Below are positions 19,901 through 37,500 of a stretch of 64,000 nucleotides of DNA, piece by piece; position 1 is the first letter of the stretch; every line of letters begins with the position of its first letter. Position numbers and translations under genes: made by a program. Where the stretch lies: positions 11,718,001-11,782,000 of the forward strand of contig NC_135258.1 of the NCBI RefSeq assembly GCF_964204865.1, in the 5' to 3' direction. This DNA comes from Styela clava. Taxonomy: Eukaryota. The notes beneath the pieces are model-generated. The model was not told where the DNA came from, ran no database searches, and was given only the letters and a program-made list of their open reading frames with translations.

Positions 19901-21236
19901 AGTGTATTGAATTTGAATCCTGCATCAGCCAATGCAGTTTGAATATCAAGAAGTGTTGGAAGACTTCGTCCTCCTATTTCGCAGTATTGGCGAGTACTTC
20001 TGGCTATCTCTGTTAAATCTTCAGTGAATAAAATACATATTCAGTTTCAATTGAACAAATTCTATTGATGTAATAACTAATCATTAACACTGATTTAGAT
20101 GCAATGATTAATTCCATTTCACTGAGTTTCAATATCCCTACAAATGTGTGGAGAAATTGGTCTGACAGGTCAAGAATAATCTCTTTTTTAATGTAAAATT
20201 CACTTCTTAATGTAAAATTATTCAAATATTGACAACATGTATTGCTTTTTACCTATCTCACTAATAAAACTAACTACACCATGCCATATTAATATCACTC
20301 TTTGTGAAATAACTAACTTAGATGTTCAAAAACCTTGTTCAGTCGAGAGATTTATTAGCCATTGAAAACGTTAATGATGTTGAACTATAGAAATAAGTTG
20401 CCAAGTTGAACATTATTTGACATAAAAATATAAAAACGACCACGGCTTATCGATTAGGCAGGATTAAAAAAAATTTCAATAATAAAGGTTATTGTCAAAA
20501 CATGTGAAACTGTAGAAAGAACAAGCTAATATAGTTAGCATTGCAATTATATGATGAAATCTGGAAATGGTTCACTTGCAAAATAAATAAAAGCACTTGG
20601 AATTATAGAAAGATCAAAACATAGTATTCAACAAAACTCCATTTTGTTATGTATATTACGTGCATTGTTATGATAATATTATCGATTTATCATGGTTTAG
20701 ATTTGATGTAAATATCTTCAGTTAATCGCAATACCACTGGTAAATAGGGAAAGAAGAACATTACCTCAATTAACAACATATATCTATATATTGCTGTATC
20801 AGTGTACTAAGTTTGTTAAAGATTGAATTTTATATTTCCAACCTTTCAAGACATTTAATTTATGGCATTTACTTACATAACAGCCCGAAGTTCAATACAT
20901 TAGCGTATTTTTGTTTGTTTATGTCTGGCCCAAATCTCTCTATAGCAGGTTTTTTTTTTTTGTAATTTTTTTGTGCATGTGCTGTTTTAAACTTTTTTAA
21001 AGGTTTTGCTCGCTTTCCAGAATTCTTCATTTTTGTGTATTATGGAGTTTTCAGAATTAACTATCTATCTATCATTGACATACAAAAATCCACTTACAGC
21101 TTTGTGCAATTTCTGTCAATGTCTCCAGTGCGGACTTTCGAACAAACTCGCAGCCGTTTTCCACACACACTGCACCAATGGCTGCAGTAAGGCCTTGTCT
21201 ATATGCCACAGATGGATCAGTTCCTTCTTGAGACAT
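16919..21236 (-). CDS. TAF8: Transcription initiation factor TFIID subunit 8 (6 coding exons)
   Basis: ATG 21236 MSQEGTDPSVAYRQGLTAAIGAVC...SALETLTEIAQS (21098-21236); YLTEIARSTRQYCE...PTLLDI (histone fold, ~19857-20018); PTHIP...FPDPHTYVRT (~18449-18579); SQRWDVERALTRFIAKTG (~17735-17884); LIAAVPPAIPYLSALLP (~17153-17250); IDNPYLRPAKTPKLKKSRR* with TGA at 16919-16921. AATAAA on the minus strand at ~16402-16407. Confidence 0.93.
19090..19760. mobile_element. hAT-like MITE hosting the HINE and a Merlin-MITE fragment (TAF8 intron)
   Basis: CAGGGGTGGTGACTC...GGCCCAT repeats at the left; ATGGGCC repeats...GAATCACCACTCCC at the right (imperfect TIR). Confidence 0.55.
19286..19536 (-). mobile_element. 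Helentron-associated non-autonomous element (HINE / DINE-1-like)
   Basis: Asymmetrically placed subterminal inverted repeats TGGACACGTAG (19311-19321) and CTACGTGTCCA (19523-19533); short terminal hairpin; (AAC)n tract; A/T-run flanks; no TSD. Confidence 0.65.
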
Positions 21237-21359
21237 TTTAACAACTGAACACGAAATTTCTGCAACATCAAATGAAGAAAAGCTACCCACGGAAGCTGTG
21301 AAAAAACTGCTGTATCTTTGGTGGCGAATGTGTCCTATAGTGGTGGTAGCATAAAAGTC

Positions 21360-21640
21360 ATATTGGGGATGGCAGAATAGGGATGGCGAAATACGGTCGA
21401 AAAGTGGCAGATTAGGGATGGCGAAATAGGGACGAAAAGTCAAATTGGGGATGGCGAAATGCGGTCGAAGCGTGGCAGATTAGGGATGGCGAAATGCGGT
21501 CGAATGGTGGCAGATTAGGGATGGCAAAATGCGGTCGAAGCGTGGTGGCAGATTAGGGATGGCAAAATGCGGTCGAAGCGTAGTGGCAGATTGGGGATGT
21601 CAAAATGCGGTCGAATTGTGGAGCAGATTAGGGATGGCGA
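21360..21640 (+). repeat. Tandem array, 35/38-bp unit TTAGGGATGGCGAAATGCGGTCGAAGCGT(GGT)GGCAGA (left arm of outer element)
   Basis: About 8 units read directly. Confidence 0.9.
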
Positions 21641-21734
21641 CGTTTGAGAAAGTGAAGGGCATGGTGTCAGTGTTACCGTACCGTACATCGGTACCGGTAC
21701 CATTAGTGGTGGTAGCCTAAAAGTCTCATTGCGC

Positions 21735-22450
21735 GCAGCGCATTAGGAGCAGCGCATTACGCACAGTGAGGCCGCATTAGGAGCAGCGCATTGGGCACAG
21801 TGAAGCCGCATTAGGCGCAGCGCATTGGGCACAATGCGATATCGCATTAGGAGCAGCGCATTGGGCACAATGCGTGGTGGCATTAGGAGCAGCGCATTGC
21901 GCACAGTCAGGATTGACAATTCATCCATCCATTTTATCATTGTTTATGGAATCTATAATGACAAGCTAGACACGACTTTTAAAAAGTAGCAACAGTAATT
22001 CGACTTGAATTGGTACTCGAATTTGCTGGAACTCGGCTGATGATACGTTACTGTAATTTGCTCGTTGCGAGCATCGCATTAGGAGCAGCGCATTGGGCAC
22101 AGTGAGGCCGCATTAGGAGCAGCGCATTGGGCACAGTGAAGCCGCAATAGGCGCAGCGCATTGGGCACATGCGAGATCGTATTAGGAGCAGCGCATTGGG
22201 CACAGTGAAGCCGCATTAGGCGCAGCGCATTGGGCACAATGCGAGATCGCATTAGGAGCAGCGCATTGGGCACAATGCGTGGTGGCATTAGGAGCAGCGC
22301 ATTGCGCACAGTGATGCCGCATTAAGAGCAGCGCATTGAGCACAGTGAAGACGTATTAGGAGCAGCGCATTGGACACAATACGTGGTCGCATTAAGAGCA
22401 GCGCATTAGGCACAGTGAGGCCGTATTAGCAGCAGCGCATTACGCACAGT
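21735..22450 (+). repeat. Tandem arrays, 34/36-bp unit TTAGGAGCAGCGCATTGGGCACAGTGAGGCCGCA, in two blocks (~21735-21910 and ~22070-22450)
   Basis: Units read directly; each block is followed by a related CAGGATT...GGAATCTATAA...TTCGACTTGA segment. Confidence 0.9.
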
Positions 22451-22889
22451 CAGGATTTAGCATTATTTATGGAATCTATAAAGTCGAACTCGACTTTTAA
22501 ATAGAATTCGACTTGACTTGGCAATCGAATTTGCTGGGACTCGGACCGGTGATATGTAGCCCCAATTTTATGGGGTATTCCATACATCCCATTCAACAAG
22601 GCTTTGCATAAGAAGTTACTAATACATCTGCTATGCATTTTAGAAAAAAGTTATGAGTGTTCCCATAAATATGTGCGATTAATTCACATGATGATTTCAA
22701 CTTTCCTCCATCCTGAATTGAATGCAATTATATCGTTCTTAACCTCGATCTTTATGCAAAATAAAAACAACAGCAGTGGAAAATGATATTATGTTTAATT
22801 ATACCACACACATAACATAAAGGAAAGAGATTTGAACTGTCATTTATTAATATTTTTTTCTAATCACTTATAGTCATAACATATTTTAA

Positions 22890-23318
22890 TTATTTGCTTA
22901 TATCTTTGAAGTTTATGCTCAGATGTCTCAGCTCTGGAAGGAGTTTCTTCTGATGATATTTTAATTGTTTGACCATACGGCGGGTTCTTTTTTGAAATTT
23001 AGGTCCATGTTCACTTCCACCTTCATGCATCAAAACCCCAGCTGCGTGAACCATTTCGTGTATTATTATTCCCAACCTTTTCTCCCTAGATTTGATAAAA
23101 ACGATTGAGAAGTCTTTATATATCGAAACTTATTTATCCGTTTCCTCTGGCTCATTTTTTGACGACTTCATGAAAATGTTTCGTAAAGCTTCGAAATGTA
23201 TCCCTGTGGATTCGCAGTCGTCGCAAGTCCATTTCGAATCTTCTTCGTGGTTTACTTCAGGAGGTTCTCTTAGACATTTTCTGTGAAACTAAGTTCCGCA
23301 TGCCACGCATTTATGCAT
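22890..23318 (-). pseudogene. PHD-finger + SprT-like zinc metalloprotease fusion, disrupted by 2 in-frame stops (cargo of the inner foldback)
   Basis: One frame: MHKCVACGT*FHRKCL...KWTCDDCES...FEALRNIFM...DK*VSIYKDFSIVFIKSREKRLGIIIHEMVHAAGVLMHEGGSEHGPKFQKR...*. Stops at 23289-23291 and 23130-23132. CxxC-x4-HxxC...WxCxxC fits a PHD finger; HEMxH...HGxxF fits the SprT/GCNA family. Confidence 0.72.
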
Positions 23319-24004
23319 TTTTCACCGTCGTCAGGCATACGGCGCGCGTATTAATTTGAATTCATACTACAGTATAGGAAGACGTGCACTTGTGATATTT
23401 ACTGTCCGAGTCCAATCCACCTTGGTTGGCTTTTATATTGGGTGCATTGCTGTTTTATTCTTTATATTTAATCTTAGTCTTATTTCGGTGGGTGTGCAAA
23501 GCGTGTTATATTGATAAAATATATATTTTTAAACATAAAAAATAATGTAATTGAAACTGATTAGCTATTTTGGGGATTAGACATTGTAGATACTGAGAAT
23601 TACATTCGATTTTGGAATGTTTAGTTTCCAGGACTGGTGCATATAGTAAAGTTGCAAAATTGCGTATGTCCCCAAGTCATTGACACATTTCTGACTAAGT
23701 CACAGTGCGTTAATTAACTGCGTCATACAAATTAACTCAAATCCGGCAACAATCAAAAAATTGAACCATGACAAATTATTGACTCTCAATGGCATAACAA
23801 TATCATTAGGAAGTTTTTTATGTTTTTCTCAAAACTGCTAAATATGACTTACGCAATTCGGTTATTAGCGTGACGATATTTAAAAAAAAAACGATTGGAA
23901 ATGTTTATTGATAAATGGAAACTGGAAAAGAGCAATTTTGGAAAAAGTTTTATAGTTACTCATAGCCATTTAGGCATAAACAATCAAAGTTGTATAAGGC
24001 TTTG

Positions 24005-24114
24005 GGTACTCGTGAAGTATGTGCACCAAGATGTCGCACAACCTGAACCCTAACCTTGTGTACAACCTGAGTTCAGGTTGTGCGCCATCTTGGTGCGCAT
24101 ACTTCAGGTCGTCC
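24005..24114. mobile_element. ~110-bp palindromic MITE, Merlin-like
   Basis: 8-bp TSD AGGCTTTG (23997-24004 and 24115-24122); starts GGTAC; near-perfect foldback TGAAGTATGTGCACCAAGATG...CATCTTGGTGCGCATACTTCA. Confidence 0.8.
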
Positions 24115-25359
24115 AGGCTTTGTTTAATAAAAGTTCTATAGATTGCCTTTTACCCCATTGAAACAACTCGAACAATTTAAGCCACATGTTTTGTGTTTCT
24201 GGCTATATTTTATCGGTGTACATCACCCACACATGAATATGCATTTAATGCTACATACCGTCAATATGATGATAAATATCATTATGATAAATACAGGAAA
24301 ATCACAAAAACAACATATAAAATGATTTGATTTTAAAATAAACATTGCCGCAATCAGAAAATGGTTTGTTTTTAATTTTCTATAAGATTTGCGCTTGACC
24401 TATTCAGTTTAAAAAAGTATTCAGACATAAACTGGTACTTCCATGAACAGTTTACCAGTTACATTTCCTTAATAATTTACATTGAATAATCAAAATCTAA
24501 TAAATACTGCCTCACTTCTGAAAATATACTCTGAAGTTCACAAATATGTTAAATCTTGTAACGCATTATCGCTTTTATATTTCTCTATTTTAATGTTTTT
24601 TCCACGATTTAAATTAATTTTGAACTCAATCTATATCTTCAATGATTATTCTGAACTGAATTATATGTGATTCAGAATCATGGGGCAAATTTAAGTCAGA
24701 TGTGTTTTTCCAACGTTTCGTTGGATCATAGCAAGAATTCTTTGAACAAACATACTTATGATAAAAAAGCAACCGCAAGTAAACATGCACAGTGAGAATC
24801 GCGCCTGGTATGTTGAAGAATCAATGAAACTTTTGAATGCATCATTAACAGTGGGGAACTTGGATGATAAAGCTGATTGAAAAGTATTCAGCGGATTTAT
24901 ATTGAGTAATTTATGTCAATAAGTATGGCATTATCTCTTTTCACGAAATAACAGGTATATTTGTAAGCTTTCGTTAGATCATAGTCTAACTCCTTTAGAC
25001 AAACAAGCTATAACTGCAGATATGAATGTTTTCTGATCCTCATGTCCAAAATAGTTTGCAGTCGTCTATAAATCTTCGGTATGTCTTAATAATCATTATA
25101 TTCTCATCGAAGTTATCTGGCACAATAAGACAAATATATTTTCCTATTGTTTCGTCTGACCAATTTCAGACATACATGATTCCACTGTAACAACAAAAGG
25201 CAAAGCTGTTAAATTACAGTAACGTGTCACCAATCTAGTTCTATCAAATTCGAGTACCAAGTCAAGTCGAATCACTGTTGCTACTATCTAAAAGTCGAGT
25301 CTGGCCTGTCCTTATAGATTCCTTAAACAATGATAAAATGGATGGATGAATTGTCAATC

Positions 25360-25612
25360 CTGACTGTGCACAATGCGCTGCTCCTAATGCGACCTCGCAT
25401 TGTGTCCAATGCGCTGCTTTAATGCGATCTCGCATTGTGCCCAATGCGCTGCGCCTAATGCGGCTTCACTGTGCCCAATGCGCTGCTCCTAATGTGATCT
25501 CGCATTGTGCCCAATGCGCTGCGCCTAATGCGGCTTCACTGTGCTCAATGCGCTGCTCCTAATGCGGCCTCACTGTGCGTAATGCGCTGCTCCTAATGCG
25601 CTGCGCGCAATG
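25360..25612 (-). repeat. Inverted copy of the 34/36-bp array (right arm of inner element)
   Basis: Reverse-complement units such as TGTGCCCAATGCGCTGCTCCTAATGCG. Confidence 0.9.
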
Positions 25613-26256
25613 AGACTTTTAGGCTACCAACCCCTCTCACCGGTACCGTACGAACATTTTAAGGTTCTTAAGTTTAGCATGTAGCCTAAATGTACCTGCA
25701 TATGCCAGGATACGGTAATAGGTACCACCTACCGGTACGTACCGTAGTGAGTACGGTACCGGTATGTGGCCCATTACAGCATTACCGTAATCTGTTAATG
25801 CTAATCCAGTCCTTGACGGCATGGGCAGTGTAGAGAATGGCAGTAGACAGAAAATAAGAGATTTAACATTCTTCTGGTTCAAATTAGGCTACTCTGGCAA
25901 TTGTTTTGGTGGTAATTACAAGGACAGTACGGTACCGGTACCGTACCAAGACTTGGACTTTTAATTAATATGGTAACGGTAGACTACGGTACCGGTACGG
26001 TACCGTATCATTGGACTACGGTACCGGTATGCCTTCGCGGTGGAATTATTGTGTGGCAAGATGTAGGCACGAACACGGTATGTCAAATTGAGACTGGTAA
26101 CATTGCAGCATTGTGTGGAGCAAGCGATAAACTAAAAAGTGAAACTGCTAAAGCCATTTGACTGTTTGAGTGAACTCCGCAGACCTAAGCAAAAAGTTAA
26201 TATGCATTCTAACCATTTGATATATTTAATTGCTGAATTGTCTAACTTCAAATTAG

Positions 26257-26535
26257 CAGTGGTGTGGCTCATCGCATGCTAAGCCTGTGAGCGCAATAAG
26301 CTTGGCATCGCACCTCTTATTACTTACACTATGTCAGTCTGTGTAGGTTCGCAGGGTAAATGTGGAGATTGTTAGGAATACGCTCGTCACCCCATGGTTA
26401 TGTGCGAGAGGATTACTGGACTCCTCGTCGCAGTTGGGTGGTTCACATAACTGCTGGTCGGTCACAGCTTCCTCCACCATCCAGCCATCTGGTCCATTAT
26501 CTCTCTCCTGGGATAGATATGTAGATCCTATCGTT
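26257..26535 (+). mobile_element. tRNA-derived SINE-like element; relatives at ~4944-5100(-), ~9785-10078(-), ~12110-12315(-) and ~34795-34929(+)
   Basis: A-box-like TGGCTCATCG head; B-box-like GGTTC(A/G)AATCC seen in sister copies; shared 3' end CTCTCC..GGGATA(A/G)ATATGTA(A/G)ATCCTATC. Confidence 0.6.
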
Positions 26536-26782
26536 AATCCGAGCGAGACACATGTCATGTTAATTAACTGTAGTAAAAGCCCCGAACTTCCAATTCCATT
26601 ATAAAATTTGATCGTAAATGACATTAAGTCTATAATGACTACTTGAAACTCTGTCAAGTATTTTGATATAATTTCAGATATGAAGATTAAGGTTATCTAG
26701 TCTTTAGGGATATTGCTGCAATGACTGAAGTGAGTCTATTTGTGCCAGAAAGGGGATCAAGAACTTTATAGTTTGCACTTTC

Positions 26783-27152
26783 AACAAGAGAGCGATGCTC
26801 AAATATATGGACATGCAGCCTGAGCGAAGCAGTAGTCCAGCTTACCTTTGACGGTTCGCTAAACACTAGAAGCACCAATGTTCGCTGACCTCGTGACCCG
26901 CTGCGCACGATGAACCGCCACATGGTGGCAATTTTTGATGAGGTCATAGCACAAAAGAAATGAATTCCATGCAGCTCTCAGAAATATTGGAAATACATGA
27001 AAGTAATAGCCTTCAGGCAAATCAATCTTAAACCATTGAAAATTTCAAGGCAATTCGTCCAGTAATCAACAAGAAAAGCGGTTTTTCAATATGTGTCAAA
27101 GAACAACAACATAATAACAAAACGATCCATAGGTCCACTACATGCGCACAAA
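26783..27152 (-). mobile_element. HINE copy, same family as 19286-19536
   Basis: Shares ACAAGAGAGCGATGCTCAAATATATGGACA, AAGTAATAGCCTTC, AGAAAAGCG and GTCAAAGAACAACA...GTCCACTAC. More diverged relatives at ~55465-55710 and ~57040-57190. Confidence 0.62.
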
Positions 27153-28147
27153 TGAATTGTGACATGGGACTTGATATAGTTTTATCTCCAAAACTATCTT
27201 TGTACTTCAAAACTGTGTTTTGAAGTTGATGACCGGCTCACATACTCTACTGTGTATTGGTTCAATCTGCAAATATTCTGAAACTTGAGAATGTTTATGA
27301 ATTTGAAGTGCTGAAACTTACGTTTCAGTTCAGATTTGGTATCATTGCTTCGGACAACTCATTAAAAAGTAATAATAATCGTTCAGCAGACGGAGGTTCC
27401 TATTTTGTTATAGTTAACTTTACCCTGGTACAAAAATGTATTGAAGATACTTTCTAACACAATAGCTCCGTGTAGTATTTCACAAGTTCTTGGAATATGA
27501 TTATGTTCAAATTTCATAAAGGAACCATTCTAATCTAGTAATATTTAATATTTATTCAGCATTTTAGCTTATAAGGCAAATGTTAAATGAGAAATTAGAT
27601 ACTTGTTATTTGTAAAGGGCATATAAAAATTAAACTTTAGTGTATGTTTGCTAATCCATGTTAGTAAGAGCTGTTTATTTGCCATAATTGCTTCTATTAA
27701 AATAATTTTCCTATTTTTGTTAATGTAACTTGGATCAATCATAAAAATCACTCTCATTGTTAATCTTGTTTTATAGTTTATTTATTGCTACTGTTTTTTA
27801 TGCAAACTGTATTCCAATTGTTGCATCCAAGGTTATCCATCCAGCTAATCTAAACATTTTTATGACAGATCAACTTTTTCATAGATTTCACCTAATAGCA
27901 CATAGTCAGCCCTATAGTTATCATTTTATTTACACAAACATTTGAAAGAGTGCTATCTCCTGGTCTGATCCTTTACTGCCCCGAATATTTTATCATTTCG
28001 ACTTGCTACTAGTATGCAATCTCACTTACTTTTGTGATTTCCATTTTCGTGTCTTGAAGACATTCTCATAAAATTCAGTTCCTAACCCTACCTAAAATCA
28101 CTGAGATCACACAATCGCTGAGTTTGAATACCTTTATATGTTTAATA

Positions 28148-28275
28148 GGTGCTCCCGTGTGTGCATCCCGTCCCAGCATGTGCACCAAGATGGCACACAG
28201 CCTGAACATAGTATGTGTACCACGTTAGGGTTATCAGGTTGTACGCCATCTCAGTGCACATACTACAGAAGCGTC
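28148..28275. mobile_element. Merlin-like MITE, same family
   Basis: 8-bp TSD GTTTAATA (28140-28147 and 28276-28283); starts GGTGC; shares TGTGCACCAAGATGGCACAC. Confidence 0.75.
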
Positions 28276-30691
28276 GTTTAATAACCTAATAGCTCTATTT
28301 GTGCTACTGTTCAAATTAATGTCACTGACTTCAACTTGTGTACACAAATTCCAAATATTTATTTTTTTTCTTCAATTAACGTGCAACATACTAAATTGTA
28401 TTTGTTTGAGATTCATTTTTCCAAGATACAGAATTATGTTTTAATTACCTTTCAGTATTTTTTGCCAATTATTAAACACTATTTATGGGGACTGTAGCAT
28501 TTGTGTACACGATATTATATACTTTGTCTAGTCCTTGTTTGTTTTGAAGTCAATCAATAAGATCTGATTTCATTCATGAATCATAACCACTTTGTACTAA
28601 TGCATTGTCTGCAATCCTAAAATAACAATTCCTCTGCTACTACTCCATACTGTGTTATTTTGTTCTTGTTATAAGATAAACTTGTTATTTATGTGGGTGG
28701 GTGCATATGCTGTTATATATATTCTATAATGAAGTTCCTGATTACTTTCTGTAGCAATAGTTTTCAGTGTGTAATCTTGAAATCTTGCAGTGAAAATATG
28801 TCTTCCCCCAGATAGCATTTCCTAGCATTTACTAAGTCCTTTGGTTAAGTTCATGTTTTAATATGCCAAACTATGCATGGAAACACAATGTAATTGTGTG
28901 ACAACATTTCGAATCAATATGATATACTGGTGTTATATGCTTTCATTATTATAAAATATTGTAAATTAATTTCTCAATAATGTAATAATTTTTTATTGGT
29001 TGGATATCCCAATTTTTGTTTTCACATTTTGAACCTTACTGTAAATGATGTAGGATTTCCCATTTTGCATTTATACCCGATATCTTTATAGCATCATGTC
29101 ATCTCAAATGTCATCTCTTTATTTCCGTTTACAACTTCTTTCTTGCGCGCATGTATGAATAAACATGCATGGTTCACTAGCATTTGCATGTTTTCTCATG
29201 AATGTCCTGCTTATAATTTTCTTAAAAGCAGAATGAAAAACTATTGTAATTTATAATTTAACGTTGGTGTTCTTTCTTCTATTTTTATTAATTCCCTGTA
29301 ATCAGGGAAATGCTGATGCTGACACTATTGCTGATACTAAGCGCTCCAATTAGCATTTAACCCTCACTCTCTATGTCTTCCAATGTCATATATTTCTTGT
29401 TGCTTGTGAACACTATTTTTTCAAAAACGGGAATATTCAATTCATCACTTTCATTAGGTGCTGTATACATGATTCATTCTGGCCATTTGAAGGAATATAC
29501 GCTCACTCTCATGTCAGTGCGCTTTCGTTTCTATAATATAAAGCTTTCAAAATCATATCATATTACATGAGCCAACTTTAATGTTGCTCAATTTTGAAAT
29601 GATTGATGATGATGATTTTTTTAAACCTACTTAGTTACAACAACTAGACCATTATAGTTACTTTTTAATGCCTTATACCTTACTTTGAGTCATTCACCAT
29701 TTACATATCTTAAGTAACCAATGCCATTACCTCAAATTTGAAAATACCGTAAAACCTACGATCTCTGGTCGTTCTTAGAGCATCGATTCACGGGCTTGTC
29801 AAACTCTCTGGTCATTTAGTTCAGGGACATTTAATTCATCCCTACATATATACCGTTCAATATGTTTTCAATGTTAGTCTAGTCTTGGAAAGTTTTGAGA
29901 TTGTTTTTATCGTGGAAAACTGAATAAAATGAAATAAAGAGGCCTCCTCATTCACTGTTTTTATCGTGGAAAACTGAAAATGAAATGAAGAGTTTATAAC
30001 GCCTCTTCAATCACGTAGTCGTTAGAGGGTTGTGATTAGAGTGGTAGTGACTTCAACGTGGCAGAAAGCCACTCTGAAAATGCAATTCTCATACAGTGAA
30101 ATCCCGTTTCAAAGCTCTTTTGAAACCACGGGAATATTTACCGTAGTCCGTAGCGTTGGAACATATTTCGGTAATTAGTATTACACAAATTACATAAAAT
30201 CAAGTACAAGATATTACCTTAGTCCTTCAACGTCAAAGATAACGAGTCTAACGGAAAAATTGCGGTAGCGGGTTTACCTACGAGTGGCCAATACCGAATA
30301 GTTCACTGTTTCGAATACATTTGAGGTTCAAAAAACGCTTATCTATAATATGCGAAAGAATTTGCATGGAATAAACAAGGAATAACTGGCTATATTACCA
30401 GGCATTTCATATTTACAGATTACTGCGATATATATTTTAGAATAGTAACGCTTTTATTTTTTCACAAGTCGACGTAATCATGAGTTAGTTACGTTAACAG
30501 ATTTAAATTAAGATGGCAGGGCATTTGAAATAGTGGTATCGGTCATGGATTTGAATATTTGGCGCAACACAAAATCATCCTGGTAAAAAGTTCATACTTT
30601 CAAATACCAACCATTATTCAAATTATTTGCCAAAAAGCGGGATAAAGTATAAATTATTTTTCCGACTTGGGACAATTTTTCCAAGAGTCTG

Positions 30692-31172
30692 AAAATACGA
30701 ATAAAAAATTAATTATATTCAGGCGCTTTACCACACATTTTAAGCCCACAAATTGCCGTTGTATTTTTGAGTAATAATACTTTTATTATTTTGTGAATAC
30801 GAAAATACGAATCAGCAATTAATTATATTCGGGCACTTTACCACACATTTTAAGCCCACAAATTGCCGTTGTATTTTGGAGTAATAATACTTTTATTATT
30901 TTGTGAATACGAAAATACGAATCAGCAATTAATTATATTCGGGCACTTTACCACACATTTTAAGTCCGTGTAGTGTATTTTTGAGTAATATTATTTTGTG
31001 AATACGAATCAGAAATTAATTATATTCGGGCACCTTGCCACACATTTTAAGTCCACAAATTCCAGTAGATTTCAGAGTAATAATACTTTTATTATTCAGT
31101 AAATCCGAAAATAGGAATCAAAAATGAATAATATCGGGCAGTTCACTACACATTTTATGCTCACAAATTGTC
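30692..31172 (+). repeat. About 4 tandem copies of a ~110-120-bp unit, bracketed by a ~200-bp direct repeat (~30487-30678 and ~31186-31395)
   Basis: AATACGAATCAGCAATTAATTATATTCGGGCACTTTACCACACATTTTAAG recurs four times; GGTATCGGTCATGG...AAAATCATCC...TTCCGACTTG.GACAATTT occurs twice. Confidence 0.85.
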
Positions 31173-33079
31173 GTCGCAACCATAAGTTACGTTAAACAAA
31201 ACTAAATTAATAACGCATAATAATTTTATATGCTGGTATCGGTCATGGGTATAAATAATTTGCACAACAGAAAATCATCCCAGTAAAAAGTCGAAACTTT
31301 CAAATATCATTATCAAAATTATTTGCCATAAAGCGGGAAAAAGTATTGATTATTTCCTCTAATAAATCGACTTGTTTTCCGACTTGCGACAATTTATTGG
31401 GTATCATAACAATTACGACATTGAATAACCTTCAATTTCTTGACGTAATGAAAATGAATGTGTAAAATCGTTTGAAGATTCCCGCAAAAACGAAAAACCG
31501 TGTTTACGATGAAAAGAGATATTATTCGAAAATCAGCCGAAAATGTATTCGAATATTTGATTCGTTTTGGACAACCCTGTCTACGAACCACAGTCTTCTT
31601 TTCTACAATACAACAATAATTTTCGACCCAATTCTTTAAAAAGGTTCGCCATTCCTGCTAGACTAACCCATCAAATTGCGTGTTCCCTGACTACTACATG
31701 AAACATTAGCGTTTTCTGACCATCAAATGTTTGAGATTGTTTTGTAAAGTTCAAAAACAATTAGGTTGAAAATTTACAGTTGCAGATTAGTAGTAATTTG
31801 ACTCCAGTGTAAATGTCGAATATTCAGGGAAGTATTTCACTGGCTTTATTTCGCTAAATGTCCGTACAATTATAGAGACCCTGCTCAGCGCAGAATGTTT
31901 TCAAAACATTTCGCCTATAAGTTTATGAAAGTATAATTTCATTTGATTTCAATTGAAAATCTAGAAAGGCTTTTTGTATCTTATACTCACCAGAACAAAT
32001 ATTACAATCATTAGATATGAATATTGAACGTATTACTAGCTCAAAATTAATTCCTCATCAAACGCATTTGAACGCGAAATAACGGTGCACGAAACTACGC
32101 CAGTTATAAGCACCATTAAATATTAAACAATGCGGATATATATAGCACCAAGGTCTAACCCACCCTATTCCAAACAGCACGGAAAATTCGTCGCAAATGC
32201 GTCTTTCCTTGGAATTCAATTGCAACAAAGAACAAGACTTGCGTTACACGTAACACATTAATTTATAAGTTGCTCCTTCGCTATCCAGTAAGACATGGGT
32301 TGGATTCTGTACCAAGTAATGGTAATTATGTTTCTCAAGAAGTAAAGCATGCAAGAAGATTCCTAAAAAGTCAAACTAGTCTTCGACATTTTCTTTCTGA
32401 AAAACGATAAAATGGATGAATTTGGGGGTTTCCAACATTTTGTGTTGAAATCTTCTATTAGTTGGTTTTTGAACTGTTTATACCAAAATCCCTATGTTTA
32501 ATTACCTTGCCTTTTGTAGATTCTTTGCCAGTGTTATACAAAAGTCGCATTTTCCTTTTTACGCAGTTCAAATAGTTTGTCGCGTTTTCATGAATAATAT
32601 TATACAAAAGTGAGTAATACTACAACGTATATTCCTATTCAAAGACTCTCCTCTAGATAGGAATTCACCCAATATCATAAAAATCATTTTATAGCATAAT
32701 ATATCGAACACATCTTTACATCAAAAGGTTATATTCAAATTATAAAACCAATTAACTTCGAAAGAAATTTTGAGAATTGAAATTAACGAAACACGGAGAA
32801 TGAACTCTTCATGCAGTGTGATCGTGAATTATGCCAAAAATATTTTAAAGCAAAACAGGATTCTTCTACATATATACTTGAGCAACTTAAAATATTTGTA
32901 ATTGAAATGAATTGTTTAATAACAGTATTTGGAATAGAAATATCGCAGGCTTCGGGGTGGCGTAAAAAATTGTAGGGACAATAATACCAGGGAAAAATTG
33001 AAATTTTCATGACGAAAGAGATAAAACATATGACCTCATAAATGATGGCACGATCCACAATGCTATGCCAGCCAATGCA

Positions 33080-33189
33080 GACCTCTTGAAATATGCGCAA
33101 CAAGCTGGCGCACAACCTGAACTCAGGTTGTGTACCAGGTTAGGGTTCAGGTTGTGCGACATCTTGGTGCGCATACTTCAGGAGTACCC
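33080..33189. mobile_element. Merlin-like MITE, same family
   Basis: Reverse-complement match to 24005-24114, ending TACTTCAGGAGTACC; TSD not evident. Confidence 0.7.
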
Positions 33190-33439
33190 AAAACTTGATG
33201 AGAGAAACGTAATAATATATCAAACATTAAAAGATTGTATTAAAATTATTAATCAGAAAAATATAAAAAAAAAGTTCAAGACTTGATGAGAAAAATGTAA
33301 TAATATATAAAACAATAAAATTAATCATAAAATAAAGACACGATGTAAAATCGGACAATACCTTTTAAATGAATTTTAAAATGTGAAACACTGATCAGAT
33401 TAGTTCCTTAAATTTGACAATGTTCGTTTCCAAATCTGA

Positions 33440-34215
33440 CACGCATTTCGCCATCCTTAACATGACACCCGTCAACCCACTGCCTTATTTCGCCCTCCTT
33501 AATCTGACACGCATCGACCATATTTCATCATCTCTAACCTGACAGGAGTCGACCCTATTTCGCCACCCCCAATTTGACACGCTTCGTCCGCATTTCGCCA
33601 TCCCTAATCTGCCACGCTTCGACCGTATTTCGGCATCCCTAATCTGCCACCACGCTTCGACCGCATTTTGCCATCCCTAATCTGCCACGTTTCGACCGTA
33701 TTTCGCCATCCCTAATCTGCCACCACGCTTCGACCGCATTTTGCCATCCCTAATCTGCCACGCCTCGACCGCATTTCGCCATCCCTAATCTGCCACGCTT
33801 CGACCCCATTTCGCCATCCCATTTTGACACTCATCGACTGTGTTTTCCCAGCCCGAATTTGACAGGTACTAATCCATTTCATCAGCCCCAAATCTAAACA
33901 CTTTGGCCATATTTCTTTGTAATTTTGAGGCAATTGTTTATTGTTATCTGTATACTAAACAGCGCATTATGACAGTCGATTTGGCAAAAACTGACAGCCA
34001 TCGACCGCATTTTGTCATCCCTAATCTGCCACCACGCTTCGACCGCATTTTGCCATCCCTAATCTGCCACCATTCGACCGTATTTCGCCATCCCTAATCT
34101 GCCACGCTTCGACCGCATTTTGCCATCCCCAATTTGTCTTTTCGTCCCTATTTCGCCATCCCTAATCTGCCACCTTTCGACCGTATTTCGCCATCCCTAT
34201 TTTGCCATCCCCAAT
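33440..34215 (-). repeat. Inverted copies of the 35/38-bp array in two blocks (~33440-33900 and ~34000-34215), right arm of outer element
   Basis: Reverse-complement units such as CCATCCCTAATCTGCCACGCTTCGACCGCATTT; units degrade away from the centre of the inner block. Confidence 0.9.
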
Positions 34216-34257
34216 ATGACTTTTATGCTACCAACCCTCCTCAATGTGTCTAAAATT

Positions 34258-34400
34258 GGGGAAGTCCCTACTAAAATTATTTATTTGTGATGTAACAATT
34301 AAATTTTATTTTAGTTATACAATATTTTGTAATATGGTACCGGTATCATGTGTGACGACATAATTAATTTTTTCGATAGGTTTTATTTAGGGACTTCCCC
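34258..34400. mobile_element. Small TIR element upstream of ELAC1
   Basis: Perfect 13-bp inverted repeat GGGGAAGTCCCTA ... TAGGGACTTCCCC. Confidence 0.55.
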
Positions 34401-34558
34401 TATTAAATGTACAAAATGAGCAACTTTGTGTAATGCTGATTCTTAGATCACGTTTGCAATCAGTAAACGGTGGAGCGAGGTGTCGATATCCTGGTATCTG
34501 TGTTGGTTTATAAGTAAGATTCTCAACTGGCTTCGATCTCTAAGAGAGGAGATCAAGA

Positions 34559-37500
34559 ATGGATGTCGCATTTTTGGGAACTGGATCCGGCTATCCATCA
34601 CCGTGTAGGAGTGAGTTTTAAAATATTTATTTCCACAATCTTGTAATTTGGTTTTCAGGTTATCAATTCTCATAAGCTTCAAACATGAACCTGAAATGGT
34701 TGTTTTAACATTAATAATAAATAATAGATCAACATGTATAATACGATAATAACAGAATTGTTCAAAGTATATCTGATCAAGTCCATGCTTCCGAAAACAA
34801 ATAACTAAATAATCCCGTACCGTACCCGACATAGAATGGTAACCCGGACGAGAGGCTGTGGTTCGCCATATGGTTAAGCCATCTTATCACTTTCCTCTCC
34901 CCGGGATAAATATGTAAATCCTATCCTATTTACAGGTGCTTCGTGTATGGCAATAAGACATGAAGGAGAAGTCTGGTTGATTGATTGTGGGGAAGGATCA
35001 CAAACACAAATCATGAAAACAAAACTGATTCGACCGGGAAGAATAACAAAAATTTTCATCACCCATCTGCATGGCGACCATTTGTTTGGCTTACCAGGTA
35101 CAGTTATTTAGAATGATCACTATAATCATTGACATTTCCAGATTGATATTTTCTTGTGAAAAAATTGAAAAATACTCAGGTCTTCTCTGCACAATATCAA
35201 TGGCATATAAATCTTCTAATGAAGAAGCAATGGAAGTTGAAAAGGAAGATATTGATCCCACAGATACTATTGTTGAGATATATGGACCATGTGGCCTAAG
35301 GAGGTAAGTAAAGACTTAATCTACAAGCGTAAACTAATCAAAGTATGGTTTAGTTGCATATGGTTATTGTCGATCATACTCAATGTAAGTTTGCTTAATA
35401 TACCAAATGTCAAAAAAAGGACTTCGAGGACTCTTTTTTTTGGTACTCCTGAAGTATGTGCACCAAGATGTCGCACAACCTGAACCCTGACCTGTTACAC
35501 AACCCAAGTTCAGGTTGTGCGCCAGGAGGTCCCTTTTTTTTAGTATGAAATTACATCATGCTCGTGTAGTTTTGTCCAATATTTGTAAATTCCTATTTGA
35601 AAACATGGTCCCAGAATATTTTTATTTTAATGATTATTCTTTTTTCAGATTTCTGAGGGAATCTCTCAATTTATCTCGTTCTATATTATCATTTAAATAT
35701 GTTGTTCATGAACTAGTTCCCGAAAATAAACAATATAATCATATTAAAGGAGGAGATCCTGACTGGAGCAAGTGGAGTCCAGATCATATGGCAACAGGTA
35801 GGCAGGAAATTTACAGTAAATTATCATTTTTCATTTTTTATACTAAATATTTTTATGTTTTATATTTTGATTTAGGCAGTCTTCACATAAATGAATGTAA
35901 ACATGGACGTGCAATATTTTATGATATATCTTGTGAAGGTTGGTTTATATTCAAGGACGAGAAGATCACAATACTGGCAGGTCAGCTCTGTCACCGGTCA
36001 GTTGCCCAAAACTAGCTAGCTACCTTTAAATATTAGAATCACATAGATGTTCGCATTTACTTGAAGTGTATTCGGGAATACAAGCTGTAAAACAGAAATG
36101 GGCATATTATCTTTGGTTGAAAATACCTAGAGGTAATTGAAGTAAAACATATTGAAATTTTTTTCTATCAATATCAGAATATAGTCCATATTTGCGTATT
36201 CAGCAAATCCAAAGCAATGGAATGAAAATATTTTTTTCCTTTTCATAAAAAATATTGAGTTTTAACTTCAAGAGATTTTAATGTGAAGTTTTTTAAATAA
36301 ATAGACGGTGATGCTATGGAGAGAACCTAGTATCAGAATTGGAGAAATAAATTTTCTGATAATGGCAACAAAAGATAAGAATATTGATTAATTATAAATC
36401 TTTACAAACTAAATATGATAGTGAAATGTTGTTGCAACATATTTTTTCTATAGTATTCCTGCTTTTGGCTACGTTTTCTTTGAACCTCCGAAACCTGGTC
36501 GTTTAGAAAGTGAAAAACTACAAAAAGCTGGCGTACCGAAAGGTGAGAAGCCTCTAGCATTCAATACAACATCCCCACAACATCCCCTAATTAATATTTG
36601 TAAAACTACTCTAGGACCACTGTATGGAAAAATCAAGCGAGGTGAATCAGTGACACTCGCGGATGGAACAGTTATTAACCCAAGGGATTATATTGGTCCT
36701 GAACAACCTGGCAGAAAGGTATGATTTTTCTTGCTCAATCCTCTAACTCTGGATGATGAATCAAATTTTGTTTTCTAGTAGTTTGTCTCTATTATACAAT
36801 TTTGGAGGAGAATTGAGAAAATTCATTGGTAACATTCTCAGTAGTTGTCTTTAGTTGCGAATGCACAAATAGGTTTTTATTTATATTTTTTATATGATTT
36901 ATTGATATCTAATGATATGTAAACAGCCATTTCTGAATCTTTTTGGTTAGCGATTGCCTACCCAATTTCTTACACCCTAGACGAGGTGGCTAAGATTTCG
37001 GTCCCACATTTTATTCAGAATATCTTGATATCAGACAATATGAAGCTGCGTTGCTTTTTATGCTATAAAAGTTCCTGAATCCCCATTTTTTACATCCTCA
37101 GGTAGCTATATTGCAAGACACTCGTGATTCCTGGTCAACTCTTTCAATTTGTCAAAACTGTGATGTCATGATACATGAAGCAACAAATGAAAATTCACAT
37201 TATAAACAATGTTATGATAACGGACATTCAACGCCGGCAATGGCTGCAGAATTTGCAACTGCTGCTAATGCTTCAACATTAGTTCTGACACACTTTAGTC
37301 AAAGGTGAAATTCATTTATTAAAGATTAGATGCTTTTTTATAAATTCTGGTTGGTTTGGATGCTTGAAACTGATCAAATGTGATCATCTGTCTGGTTTAT
37401 TTCTCTATCCAATGTAGATGCAGAGTGTTACAGTATTAATTCCCTCAGTTTTAAAATATTGTTGATTACGAGACTGATGTTGATAATATGTTGTGGGTTT

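What the first reader, a model, noticed from the sequence alone, without database searches (positions are those of the whole stretch)
22890..23360. Transposon-borne PHD finger fused to a SprT/GCNA-like protease
Seen: one minus-strand frame with two stops joins a PHD half (CVAC...FHRKC...WTCDDC) to IIIHEMVHAA...HGPKF; a frameshifted (R)AVC..DDGE just upstream may be the missing first CxxC. Known: HExxH plus HGxxF/W defines SprT-family metalloproteases (SPRTN, GCNA/ACRC), which remove DNA-protein crosslinks, and MULEs are known to carry PHD fingers and Ulp1/OTU cysteine proteases. Inference: a chromatin reader coupled to a SprT protease as transposon cargo is not something I recognise as well described. 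It might disassemble post-transposition complexes or cleave silencing proteins. This is my best candidate for a new system, although this copy is dead.
Basis: partly seen in the sequence, partly recalled or inferred. Interest (0 to 1): 0.85.

Follow-up and report, generated by a model that had tools for sequence, protein, structure and literature searches.

The report
Zisupton transposase tail: PHD plus SprT protease
The window holds a dead fragment of a cut-and-paste transposon whose intact relatives, in this sea-squirt genome and in corals and sea cucumbers, encode one giant transposase ending in a SUMO protease, a chromatin-reading PHD finger and a Spartan-like zinc protease, a combination I could not find described in the papers I could search.

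Summary
On the minus strand, 22893-23341 reads a PHD C-terminal half joined to HEMVH...HGPKF. That part passes Pfam's SprT-like cut-off (27.1 bits against 25.6).

This copy is a remnant with two in-frame stops, one frameshift, a 147-bp deletion that removes the N-terminal half of the SprT domain, and no upstream ORF. It lies in a 3.9-kb non-autonomous deletion derivative (21701-25638) with long TIRs and an 8-bp TSD. Two other copies are 99.5% identical.

The parent is not a MULE. It is a 12.65-kb KDZ/Zisupton-type element encoding a protein of about 1,500 aa: C2H2 fingers, KDZ core (CxC4), Ulp1, PHD, SprT-like domain. A 52%-identical sister family in the same genome (Styela clava, by a 100% GCNA match) keeps this layout in an intact open frame of 1,588 codons.

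The same layout occurs in Oculina, Holothuria and unnamed assemblies. Fish Zisupton-like proteins lack the tail. HExxH and the third His are nearly invariant, and dN/dS is about 0.1 or less. The model (pLDDT 92.6) is closest to human SPRTN (Z 10.1). Host GCNA and SPRTN are separate, distant genes, so this is not a recent capture.

The function is inferred. First readers of this scan noted the same theme on other DNA of this genome.

The parts
21693..21700 (.). Left copy of the 8-bp target-site duplication, ACCGGTAC
   Evidence: The same 8 bases recur at 25639-25646. Three other insertions of the family also have perfect 8-bp TSDs.
21701..25638 (-). 3,938-bp non-autonomous deletion derivative of a 12.65-kb KDZ/Zisupton-type DNA transposon. 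Termini are CATTAGTGGTGGTAGCC...GGCTACCAACCCCTCTC.
   Evidence: blastn against the full-length copies on C2 and C5. Copies on C1 and C9 are 99.4-99.6% identical, of the same length, and have their own TSDs.
21701..22059 (.). Left long terminal inverted repeat, containing 34-bp tandem units (array at 21739-21911; a further internal array at 22075-22454)
   Evidence: Inverted-repeat arms 21710-21872 / 25467-25629 are 98% complementary, and 21852-22059 / 25211-25418 are 90%. TRF finds a period of 34.
22650..22889 (-). Remnant of the 3' untranslated region downstream of the transposase ORF
   Evidence: About 77% identical to full-element positions downstream of the stop codon.
22893..23129 (-). 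79-codon open piece: the C-terminal half of the SprT-like metalloprotease domain. It has HEMVH and the third zinc ligand in HGPKF, and it lacks 4 codons relative to intact copies.
   Evidence: Pfam PF10263 at 27.1 bits, above the 25.6 cut-off. Aligned to intact copies.
23116..23117 (-). Site of a 147-bp internal deletion that removed the N-terminal half of the SprT domain (49 codons, NSICS...ASISK in intact copies)
   Evidence: The deletion is shared by the 93-100% identical copies.
23130..23132 (-). In-frame TAA stop where intact copies have Tyr
23133..23288 (-). 52-codon piece: the PHD-finger C-terminal half (H-x2-C ... C-x2-C) plus the linker helix
   Evidence: PF00628 at E=2e-3. The intact version aligns to the Spp1, PHF2, PHF8 and BPTF PHD fingers.
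23289..23291 (-). In-frame TAG stop where intact copies have the Trp of the WFH motif
23292..23341 (-). PHD middle part, KMHKCVACGT, and, one frame off, RMPDDGEK. A 1-base frameshift lies near 23318-23321.
23343..23344 (.). Deletion or rearrangement junction: ORF homology ends here. About 5.1 kb (Ulp1, transposase, zinc fingers) is missing.
   Evidence: The junction occurs in exactly three genomic copies.
23344..24930 (.). Remnants of the region 5' of the ORF in the full element. 23344-23879 is inverted relative to the full-length copies and belongs to an abundant repeat.
25211..25638 (.). Right long terminal inverted repeat with a 34-bp tandem array (25363-25600)
25639..25646 (.). Right copy of the 8-bp target-site duplication, ACCGGTAC

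Best explanation
Shown by the evidence:
- The window fragment is the decayed 3' end of the transposase gene of a KDZ/Zisupton-type cut-and-paste transposon.
- It is preserved inside a 3.9-kb internally deleted, recently mobilised non-autonomous copy.
- In intact relatives a single ORF of about 1,500 aa encodes N-terminal C2H2 fingers, the KDZ transposase core with its CxC4 cysteine cluster, a Ulp1 (C48) SUMO-protease domain, a PHD finger and a minimal SprT-like zinc-metalloprotease domain.
- The tail is an old, selected part of the transposase in a marine-invertebrate and tunicate lineage of these elements, not captured host cargo.

Inferred mechanism:
- The SprT domain is an active protease. 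It lacks SPRTN's own DNA-binding zinc subdomain, so I expect it to be tethered to DNA and chromatin by the transposase's DNA-binding parts and by the PHD finger on a histone H3 tail.
- There it would cut DNA-bound proteins. Most likely these are the very stable transposase complex itself, or host proteins piled on it, so that repair and replication can finish transposition. The neighbouring Ulp1 domain would strip SUMO from the same substrates.

My odds: about 0.9 for the identity and architecture, about 0.7 that the domain is catalytically active, and about 0.4 for this specific role.
For: Domain identity:
- SprT-like Pfam hits lie above or near the cut-off in the window piece (27.1 bits) and in homologues (25.5 to 37 bits).
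- A family profile finds human SPRTN as its best PDB sequence hit, across HExxH..HGxEF (E=1e-3).
- The AF2 model has pLDDT 92.6. Its best structural match is SPRTN 6mdx at Z 10.1, rmsd 2.9 A over 107 residues; the next is 7.3 and Wss1 is 7.2. SPRTN is also Foldseek's top hit.

Architecture:
- A 506-aa ORF carries Ulp1+PHD+SprT, and the CxC4 KDZ cluster lies just upstream.
- A sister family has an intact 1534-aa ORF in a 1588-codon open frame.
- The same layout occurs in Oculina patagonica (1659 aa), Holothuria leucospilota (1764 aa) and ENA proteins.

Transposon status:
- The TIRs are long.
- Four insertions have perfect 8-bp TSDs.
- Copies are 98-99.6% identical.

Selection:
- H-E-x-x-H and the third His are invariant or nearly so across 21 sequences that are only 17-33% identical to the first (three same-genome rows are closer).
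- Between families A and B, dN is 0.28 with saturated dS, giving a ratio of about 0.1 for the SprT half, similar to the Ulp1 region.
- All tail-bearing transposases fall on one side of a branch with 100% SH-aLRT support in a tree of the transposase core.

Not a capture: host GCNA (C17) and SPRTN (C2) are separate genes. The tail profile is only 18% identical to host GCNA.

PHD finger: its best matches are the Spp1, PHF2, PHF8 and BPTF fingers.
Against: - There is no experimental or expression evidence.
- The domain lacks SPRTN's zinc-binding and basic DNA-binding subdomain and ends about 40 residues after the third His, so DNA-dependent activation is an assumption.
- The Foldseek E-value is weak (0.038), and Pfam scores are only near threshold for some members (17-25 bits).
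- The proposed role rests on analogy with SPRTN, Wss1 and GCNA, taken from general knowledge. Other roles fit the anatomy equally well.
- In the sister family C the PHD motif has M instead of the conserved W, and the third-ligand motif is HAKEF, so details vary.
- Zisupton membership rests on homology to proteins that the databases do not label Zisupton, and on my memory of the original description.
Confidence: 0.8

Rival explanations
1. Anti-silencing effector. The Ulp1-PHD-SprT tail is aimed at host chromatin rather than at the transposition complex. The PHD finger docks on histone tails, Ulp1 removes SUMO from SUMO-dependent heterochromatin or TE-silencing factors, and SprT degrades them, keeping the element transcribed.
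For: The architecture is the same as in the best explanation. Ulp1 domains recur in unrelated transposon superfamilies, for example Ginger in the title list, which suggests a general benefit tied to SUMO. The PHD resembles histone H3K4 readers.
Against: No substrate is known. A protease fused in cis to a 1,100-aa DNA-binding transposase is more simply explained as acting where the transposase sits. Nothing here separates this reading from the best explanation.
Confidence: 0.3
2. Polyprotein maturation. The SprT (and/or Ulp1) domain cuts the giant transposase precursor itself into separate working proteins, as proteases of viruses and virus-like elements do.
For: A single ORF of about 1,500 aa has long low-complexity linkers between modules. 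From general knowledge, SPRTN autocleaves and Ulp1-like clan CE proteases process adenovirus and Polinton proteins.
Against: No conserved cleavage-site motif was looked for or seen. Fish relatives manage without the SprT tail. The PHD finger has no role in this model.
Confidence: 0.15
3. One reading: a MULE carrying a PHD-SprT gene as cargo, making a new kind of system.
For: The PHD-SprT fusion is real and transposon-borne. The long TIRs superficially resemble foldback or Mutator elements.
Against: Pfam finds the KDZ-specific CxC4 cluster and no MULE or MuDR domain in the upstream ORF. The TSD is 8 bp in 4 of 4 insertions, as reported for Zisupton (PMC12730594). The closest proteins are fish Zisupton-like and HMGXB3-named proteins. 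The module is the C-terminus of the transposase ORF, not a separate gene.
Confidence: 0.03
4. Neutral capture of a host GCNA or SPRTN fragment (Pack-MULE style) with no function for the element.
For: The window copy itself is broken and lies in a non-autonomous element. About 17 further short copies keep only the last 77 codons.
Against: Host GCNA and SPRTN are present elsewhere and are only distantly related to the tail (18% identity). The tail is in frame with the transposase in three Styela families and in cnidarian and echinoderm elements, with the catalytic residues conserved. dN is much lower than dS.
Confidence: 0.03
5. The HExxH domain is a generic minimal zincin (minigluzincin or YbeY-like), not a SprT-family member, and the SprT label is a motif coincidence.
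For: Structural matches at Z 6-7 to YbeY-like proteins, Wss1, abylysin and selecase. Foldseek finds no match at E<=0.001. The SPRTN zinc-binding subdomain is absent.
Against: SprT-like is the top Pfam family in every member scanned, the only other metallopeptidase hits (Astacin, Peptidase_M90) being sub-threshold, with scores up to 37 bits and profile coverage 14-99 of 108. SPRTN is the top hit by sequence profile, by Foldseek and by VIA-align, where it stands 2.8 Z units above the next. hhalign against host GCNA gives probability 94.8%. The third ligand sits in the family-typical HGxxF motif.
Confidence: 0.08

Closest known systems
Zisupton / KDZ (Kyakuja-Dileera-Zisupton) DNA transposons
   Same: Both have a large transposase with the CxC4 cysteine cluster, TIRs and 8-bp TSDs, as reported for Zisupton in PMC12730594. 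The transposase core is 36-44% identical to fish Zisupton-like proteins, some of which end in a Ulp1 domain. From memory, the original fish Zisupton was described with a C-terminal SUMO-protease domain (Bohne et al. 2012, not readable here).
   Different: The Styela, coral and sea-cucumber lineage adds a PHD finger and a SprT-like metalloprotease after Ulp1. The fish proteins fetched lack this tail. Families A, B and C here are single long ORFs, whereas Zisupton is described as multi-exonic (PMC9297572).
SPRTN (Spartan) / Wss1 DNA-protein-crosslink proteases
   Same: HExxH plus a third His in HGxxF. SPRTN is the best sequence-profile and structural match.
   Different: The sequences are about 15% identical. 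There is no zinc-binding or basic DNA-binding subdomain, and no SHP, PIP or UBZ motifs. The domain is the C-terminal module of a transposase. Activity is untested.
GCNA / ACRC (germ cell nuclear acidic peptidase)
   Same: A SprT domain, and a functional link to SUMO (general knowledge). hhalign of the tail profile against Styela GCNA gives probability 94.8%.
   Different: Host GCNA is a separate gene on C17 with a disordered acidic N-terminus, a SprT zinc ribbon (PF17283) and an HMG-like end. The transposon tail has none of these and is only 18% identical.
Ulp1-carrying transposons of other superfamilies (plant MULEs such as KAONASHI, Ginger)
   Same: A SUMO-protease domain is encoded by a DNA transposon, sometimes with zinc fingers (Ginger: PMC2836005; the MULE examples are from general knowledge).
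   Different: The transposase superfamily differs, and none of these is known to me to carry a SprT-type metalloprotease.

Membership tests
SprT-like metalloprotease (Pfam PF10263) | HExxH zinc-binding and catalytic motif | tested here: met
   HEMVH in the window. H101, E102 and H105 are invariant or at least 90% conserved in the 21-sequence alignment. HExxH is present in every full-length homologue.
SprT-like metalloprotease (Pfam PF10263) | Third zinc ligand His in an HGxxF/W motif about 12-20 residues downstream | tested here: met
   HGPKF in the window. H118 is at least 90% conserved and aligns with SPRTN's HGPEF.
SprT-like metalloprotease (Pfam PF10263) | Score above Pfam's gathering threshold (25.6 bits) | tested here: met
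   Window piece 27.1. P0001 30.4, P0002 32.8, P0019 37.0. Borderline or below for L009 (25.5), Oculina (24.8) and family C (17.1).
SprT-like metalloprotease (Pfam PF10263) | SprT / Wss1-type fold | tested here: met
   AF2 pLDDT 92.6. SPRTN 6mdx at Z 10.1, rmsd 2.9 A over 107 residues; Wss1 at Z 7.2.
SprT-like metalloprotease (Pfam PF10263) | Proteolytic activity, stimulated by DNA | not testable with these tools
   Needs biochemistry.
SPRTN subfamily | Zinc-binding subdomain and basic region that bind DNA, plus C-terminal SHP/PIP/UBZ motifs | tested here: not met
   The protein ends about 40 residues after the third His. The model aligns only with the SPRTN protease subdomain.
GCNA/ACRC subfamily | Disordered acidic N-terminus, SprT zinc ribbon (PF17283), HMG-like C-terminus | tested here: not met
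   These features are present in host GCNA and absent from the transposon tail.
PHD finger (PF00628) | Cys4-His-Cys3 ligand pattern | tested here: met
   Intact copies read C-x-C...C-x2-C-x4-H-x2-C...C-x2-C. phmmer to the Spp1 PHD gives E=1.5e-5. P0003 scores 24.3 bits, above the 24 cut-off. The window copy keeps only C-x2-C, H-x2-C and C-x2-C, with a stop at the Trp, and lacks the first pair.
PHD finger (PF00628) | Histone H3 tail binding (methyl-lysine cage) | not testable with these tools
   An aromatic or His residue before the first Cys, and the Trp of WFH, are conserved in most members but not in family C. This is inference only.
KDZ / Zisupton transposons | KDZ transposase with an associated CxC cysteine cluster | tested here: met
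   PF18717 CxC4 at 27.1 bits (cut-off 26.9) in family A and 35.5 bits in the Oculina homologue. PF18758 itself did not hit.
KDZ / Zisupton transposons | TIRs and 8-bp target-site duplications | tested here: met
   TIR arms are 98% complementary. 8-bp TSDs in 4 of 4 insertions. The 8-bp rule is from PMC12730594.
KDZ / Zisupton transposons | Homology to bona fide Zisupton transposases | tested here: inconclusive
   E=1e-91 to 1e-114 and 36-40% identity to fish proteins with the same core and Ulp1, but none is labelled Zisupton in the database, and Repbase was not available.
Mutator-like elements (MULE) | MuDR-type transposase domain; 9-11 bp TSD | tested here: not met
   No MULE or MuDR Pfam hit in any ORF piece. 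The TSD is 8 bp.

The most novel reading that the evidence does not exclude
A lineage of Zisupton transposases carries its own Spartan-like, DNA-tethered protease together with a SUMO protease and a histone reader. On this reading the element brings a private kit for clearing DNA-protein complexes. The kit would either dismantle its own transposition complex or destroy SUMO-marked host proteins at the insertion site. That would make proteolysis a built-in step of eukaryotic cut-and-paste transposition, and would be an independent transposon-side use of the DPC-repair protease fold.
Probability: 0.3. Interest if true: 0.8.

Novelty: new variant of a known kind. Interest (0 to 1): 0.55.

Why it matters
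Transposases form very stable complexes on DNA. How eukaryotic cut-and-paste elements are cleared from their ends is poorly known.

A conserved SprT-type protease, the fold that cells use against DNA-protein crosslinks, is here fused to a transposase beside a SUMO protease and a PHD finger. This points to a testable link between transposition, SUMO and proteolysis on chromatin. The naturally intact ORFs in Styela, Oculina and Holothuria offer material to test it.

It also extends the catalogue of enzymatic modules recruited by KDZ/Zisupton elements; TET/JBP dioxygenases are already known in fungi.

For annotation, it explains dozens of stray 'SprT-like' and 'PHD' fragments in this genome as transposon debris rather than genes.

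Tried and rejected
- MULE classification: rejected (no MuDR domain, CxC4 KDZ hit, 8-bp TSD).
- Host-gene capture: rejected.
- The search for homologous proteins on the tail region of the 1534-aa ORF found nothing. The full HMMER scan of representatives then found 19 relatives.
- The first structure prediction, from a 3-row alignment, was useless (pLDDT 47.9). The 21-row alignment gave 92.6.
- phmmer of the tail against PDB found only PHD fingers. The profile was needed to reach SPRTN.
- The ESM Atlas gave only weak leads, SprT-like phage and bacterial clusters at 0.76-0.81.
- dN/dS between families A and B: synonymous sites are saturated (dS above 2.7 or not computable), so the ratio of about 0.1 is a rough figure, not a measurement.
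- Bohne et al. 2012 and Iyer et al. 2014 are not held in the library, so prior mention of a SprT tail there cannot be excluded.
- Literature searches: Zisupton + SUMO protease, KDZ + SprT + transposon, and Zisupton + metalloprotease returned nothing. In the SprT-like / transposase / Ulp1 search, none of the 20 papers listed contained 'SprT-like'.
- The boundaries of the family C element were not reached within the DNA fetched.
- No clear TIRs were found for the abundant repeat at 23344-23879.
Full report
**1. The observation**

On the minus strand of 22890-23360 a single frame reads, in order:
- KMHKCVACGT
- a TAG stop (23289-23291)
- FHRKCLREPPEVNHEEDSKWTCDDC...EETDK
- a TAA stop (23130-23132)
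- VSIYKDFSIVFIKSREKRLGIIIHEMVHAAGVLMHEGGSEHGPKFQK...ISK
- the terminal TAA (22890-22892)

The 79-aa piece passes Pfam's SprT-like threshold (PF10263, E=4e-6, 27.1 bits against 25.6). The 52-aa piece gives a sub-threshold PHD hit, as half a finger should.

The first cysteine pair of the finger is simply absent, because homology to the gene stops at 23343/23344.

**2. What the fragment belongs to**

tblastn of the 79-aa piece against the window's own genome (377 Mb) gave 48 matches. Copies on C5, C2 and C3 have open frames of 380-521 codons.

The 506-aa ORF on C5 contains three domains:
- a Ulp1/C48 SUMO-protease domain (PF02902, 27.3 bits against 20.7)
- a complete PHD finger (FCCCRMPDDGEKMHKCMACGTWFHRKC...CDDC)
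- a full SprT-like domain

Directly upstream, in the same orientation and separated only by frameshifts, lie three open pieces:
- a 526-codon piece with the CxC4 cysteine cluster specific to KDZ transposases (PF18717, 27.1 bits against 26.9)
- a 276-codon piece
- a 179-codon piece with C2H2 fingers

A 52%-identical sister family on C6 has all of this in one uninterrupted frame of 1,588 codons (ORF L047:3891-8492). A 71%-identical family on C5 has a 1,240-aa ORF with a frameshifted tail.

**3. It is a transposon of the KDZ/Zisupton type, not a MULE**

Two full-length family A copies (C2, 12,654 bp; C5, 14.2 kb with a 1.3-kb insertion) are 98% identical. Both end in long inverted repeats built of 34-bp tandem units.

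The termini are CATTAGTrGTGGTAGCC...GGCTACCAACCCCTCTC. Four independent insertions have perfect 8-bp target-site duplications:

| Insertion | TSD |
|---|---|
| window (C10) | ACCGGTAC |
| C1 | CGCAGTCC |
| C9 | GCGGAGGT |
| C5 (full-length) | AGCAACAG |

Eight-bp TSDs and TIRs are what is reported for Zisupton (PMC12730594).

The transposase core finds fish proteins at 36-40% identity (Danio, Nothobranchius, Cyprinus and others; several are named HMG domain-containing protein 3, and some end in Ulp1). It also finds a set of longer invertebrate proteins. No Mutator-type domain was found in any piece.

**4. The window copy**

Window 21701-25638 is a 3,938-bp derivative of the 12.65-kb element. 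It keeps:
- both TIRs
- the 3' UTR
- the last ~150 codons of the ORF, carrying a 147-bp and a 12-bp deletion, two stops and a frameshift
- parts of the region 5' of the ORF, one of them inverted

It lacks about 5.1 kb encoding the zinc fingers, the transposase and Ulp1.

Copies on C1 and C9 are 99.4-99.6% identical, of the same length, share the 23343/23344 junction and have their own TSDs. The broken derivative has therefore been moved recently in trans. Other copies keep more or less of the ORF. The PHD/SprT reading frame in the window is thus non-functional debris, retained only because it lies near the element's 3' end.

**5. Is the tail really a SprT domain, and is it selected?**

*Rarity and linkage.* A HMMER scan of 1.84 billion representative proteins with the tail profile found only 19 relatives. 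Among the relatives and their cluster members are an 856-aa protein and a 1,659-aa Oculina patagonica protein with the same KDZ, Ulp1, PHD, SprT order. The transposase-core search added four ENA proteins and a 1,764-aa Holothuria leucospilota protein with the same tail.

*Conserved residues.* In a 21-sequence alignment, most rows 17-33% identical to the first (three same-genome rows are closer), HExxH and the third histidine are invariant or nearly so.

*Sequence and fold.*
- The profile's best PDB sequence match is human SPRTN, across HEMxHA...HGxEF (E=1e-3).
- With this alignment AlphaFold gives pLDDT 92.6 and pTM 0.90.
- SPRTN is the top Foldseek hit (E=0.038, probability 1.0).
- SPRTN is also the top hit of the independent all-against-representatives aligner: Z 10.1, rmsd 2.9 A over 107 residues. 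The next match is at 7.3 and Wss1 at 7.2.

*Substitution rates.* Between families A and B synonymous sites are saturated while dN is 0.18-0.31 in every segment, including the SprT half. The ratio is about 0.1, as for the Ulp1 region.

*Phylogeny.* In a tree of the transposase core, all tail-bearing proteins lie on one side of a branch with 100% SH-aLRT support, opposite the tail-less fish proteins. One nested pair has kept the PHD finger but replaced the SprT part. The root is not known, so gain in one lineage and loss in the other are both possible.

**6. Not a capture of a host gene**

The genome has its own GCNA: C17, with a 663-aa ORF inside a 1,002-codon open frame, a SprT domain scoring 86 bits, a zinc ribbon and an HMG-like end. 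It is 100% identical to Styela clava LOC120332162, which also identifies the organism. The genome also has a SPRTN exon on C2. The transposon tail is only 18% identical to host GCNA (hhalign probability 94.8%).

**7. How it most likely works (inference)**

From general knowledge, SPRTN, Wss1 and GCNA are DNA-dependent proteases that remove DNA-protein crosslinks, and Wss1 and GCNA are recruited through SUMO.

The transposon domain is a minimal protease subdomain without SPRTN's DNA-binding zinc subdomain. Fused to about 1,100 residues of DNA-binding transposase, next to a SUMO protease and a PHD finger, it would be brought to DNA and chromatin by its own polypeptide. The PHD finger's nearest relatives are H3K4 readers.

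My preferred reading (about 0.4) is that it cuts DNA-bound protein at the transposon ends or at the target. The substrate would be the stable transposase complex itself, or host proteins marked with SUMO on it, so that repair can finish.

Alternatives:
- an anti-silencing effector against SUMO-dependent chromatin factors (about 0.3)
- self-processing of the giant precursor (about 0.15)
- a non-catalytic role (small, given the conserved catalytic residues)

None of these is tested.

**8. Comparison with what is known, and novelty**

Transposase-Ulp1 fusions in Zisupton are known to me from memory of Bohne et al. 2012, and Ulp1 domains occur in other transposon superfamilies.

I could not find a SprT-type metalloprotease in a transposase described anywhere in the searchable library. 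However, the two key papers could not be read. Database pipelines already tag PF10263 on some of these proteins.

I therefore rate it a new variant of a known kind. First readers of this scan noted the same theme on other DNA of this genome (s1-825793, s1-817566, s1-826011, s1-809848). Those notes were unchecked, and I reached the KDZ reading before seeing them.

**9. Verdict**

It is wrong about the superfamily and about the module being cargo.
- The window copy is dead.
- The family-level finding is real, conserved across at least three phyla, apparently undescribed, and experimentally approachable, but its function is inferred.
- Interest: 0.55.

Noticed in passing
L052 (G000:C17:4863067-4866423), ORF 1189-3180 minus: Host GCNA/ACRC orthologue. 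It has a disordered acidic N-terminus, a strong SprT domain (86 bits), a zinc ribbon and an HMG-like end, apparently in a single exon (1,002-codon open frame). It is 100% identical to Styela clava LOC120332162, which identifies the genome as Styela clava.
   Followed up: partly
L053 (G000:C2:20414025-20417177), about 1426-1617 minus: Exon of the host SPRTN orthologue (MIHALLFVTDNNKDHDGHGPEFCKHMYRIN), nearly identical to the human catalytic motif.
   Followed up: no
window 23344-23879: This segment lies directly after the deletion junction and is inverted relative to the full-length element. It belongs to an abundant repeat: at least 30 copies at 97-98% identity, and 836 first-look candidates. 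It may be a separate small element nested in the Zisupton 5' region, and may have mediated the deletion. No clear TIRs were found.
   Followed up: partly
window 21739-21911, 22075-22454, 25363-25600: 34-bp tandem arrays inside and next to the TIRs produce the repetitive pseudo-ORFs (PNALLLMR...) listed by the ORF finder. They could be transposase binding-site arrays.
   Followed up: no
L014-L030 (for example G000:C9:14956701-14956904): At least 17 copies of a roughly 50%-identical family keep only the last ~77 codons of the SprT domain, nearly all with an in-frame TGA. This looks like a second, older non-autonomous family derived from a related element.
   Followed up: no
P0051: An 864-aa protein annotated as a 'MAG: hypothetical protein [Sedimenticola sp.]' has the eukaryotic KDZ core and the SprT tail. 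It is probably a eukaryotic contig mis-binned into a bacterial MAG.
   Followed up: no
P0038/P0040: A related ENA lineage keeps Ulp1 and the PHD finger but has a different, non-HExxH C-terminal domain in place of SprT. One member also has a second Ulp1-like region at its N-terminus.
   Followed up: no
window 21236-34559: Other notes describe the 3.9-kb element as part of a 12.9-kb nested insertion between TAF8 and ELAC1. I only defined the 21701-25638 element and did not examine the outer element.
   Followed up: no
G000:C5:13163778-13165112: The C5 full-length copy carries a roughly 1.3-kb insertion, relative to the C2 copy, between the left TIR arrays and the 3' UTR.
   Followed up: no
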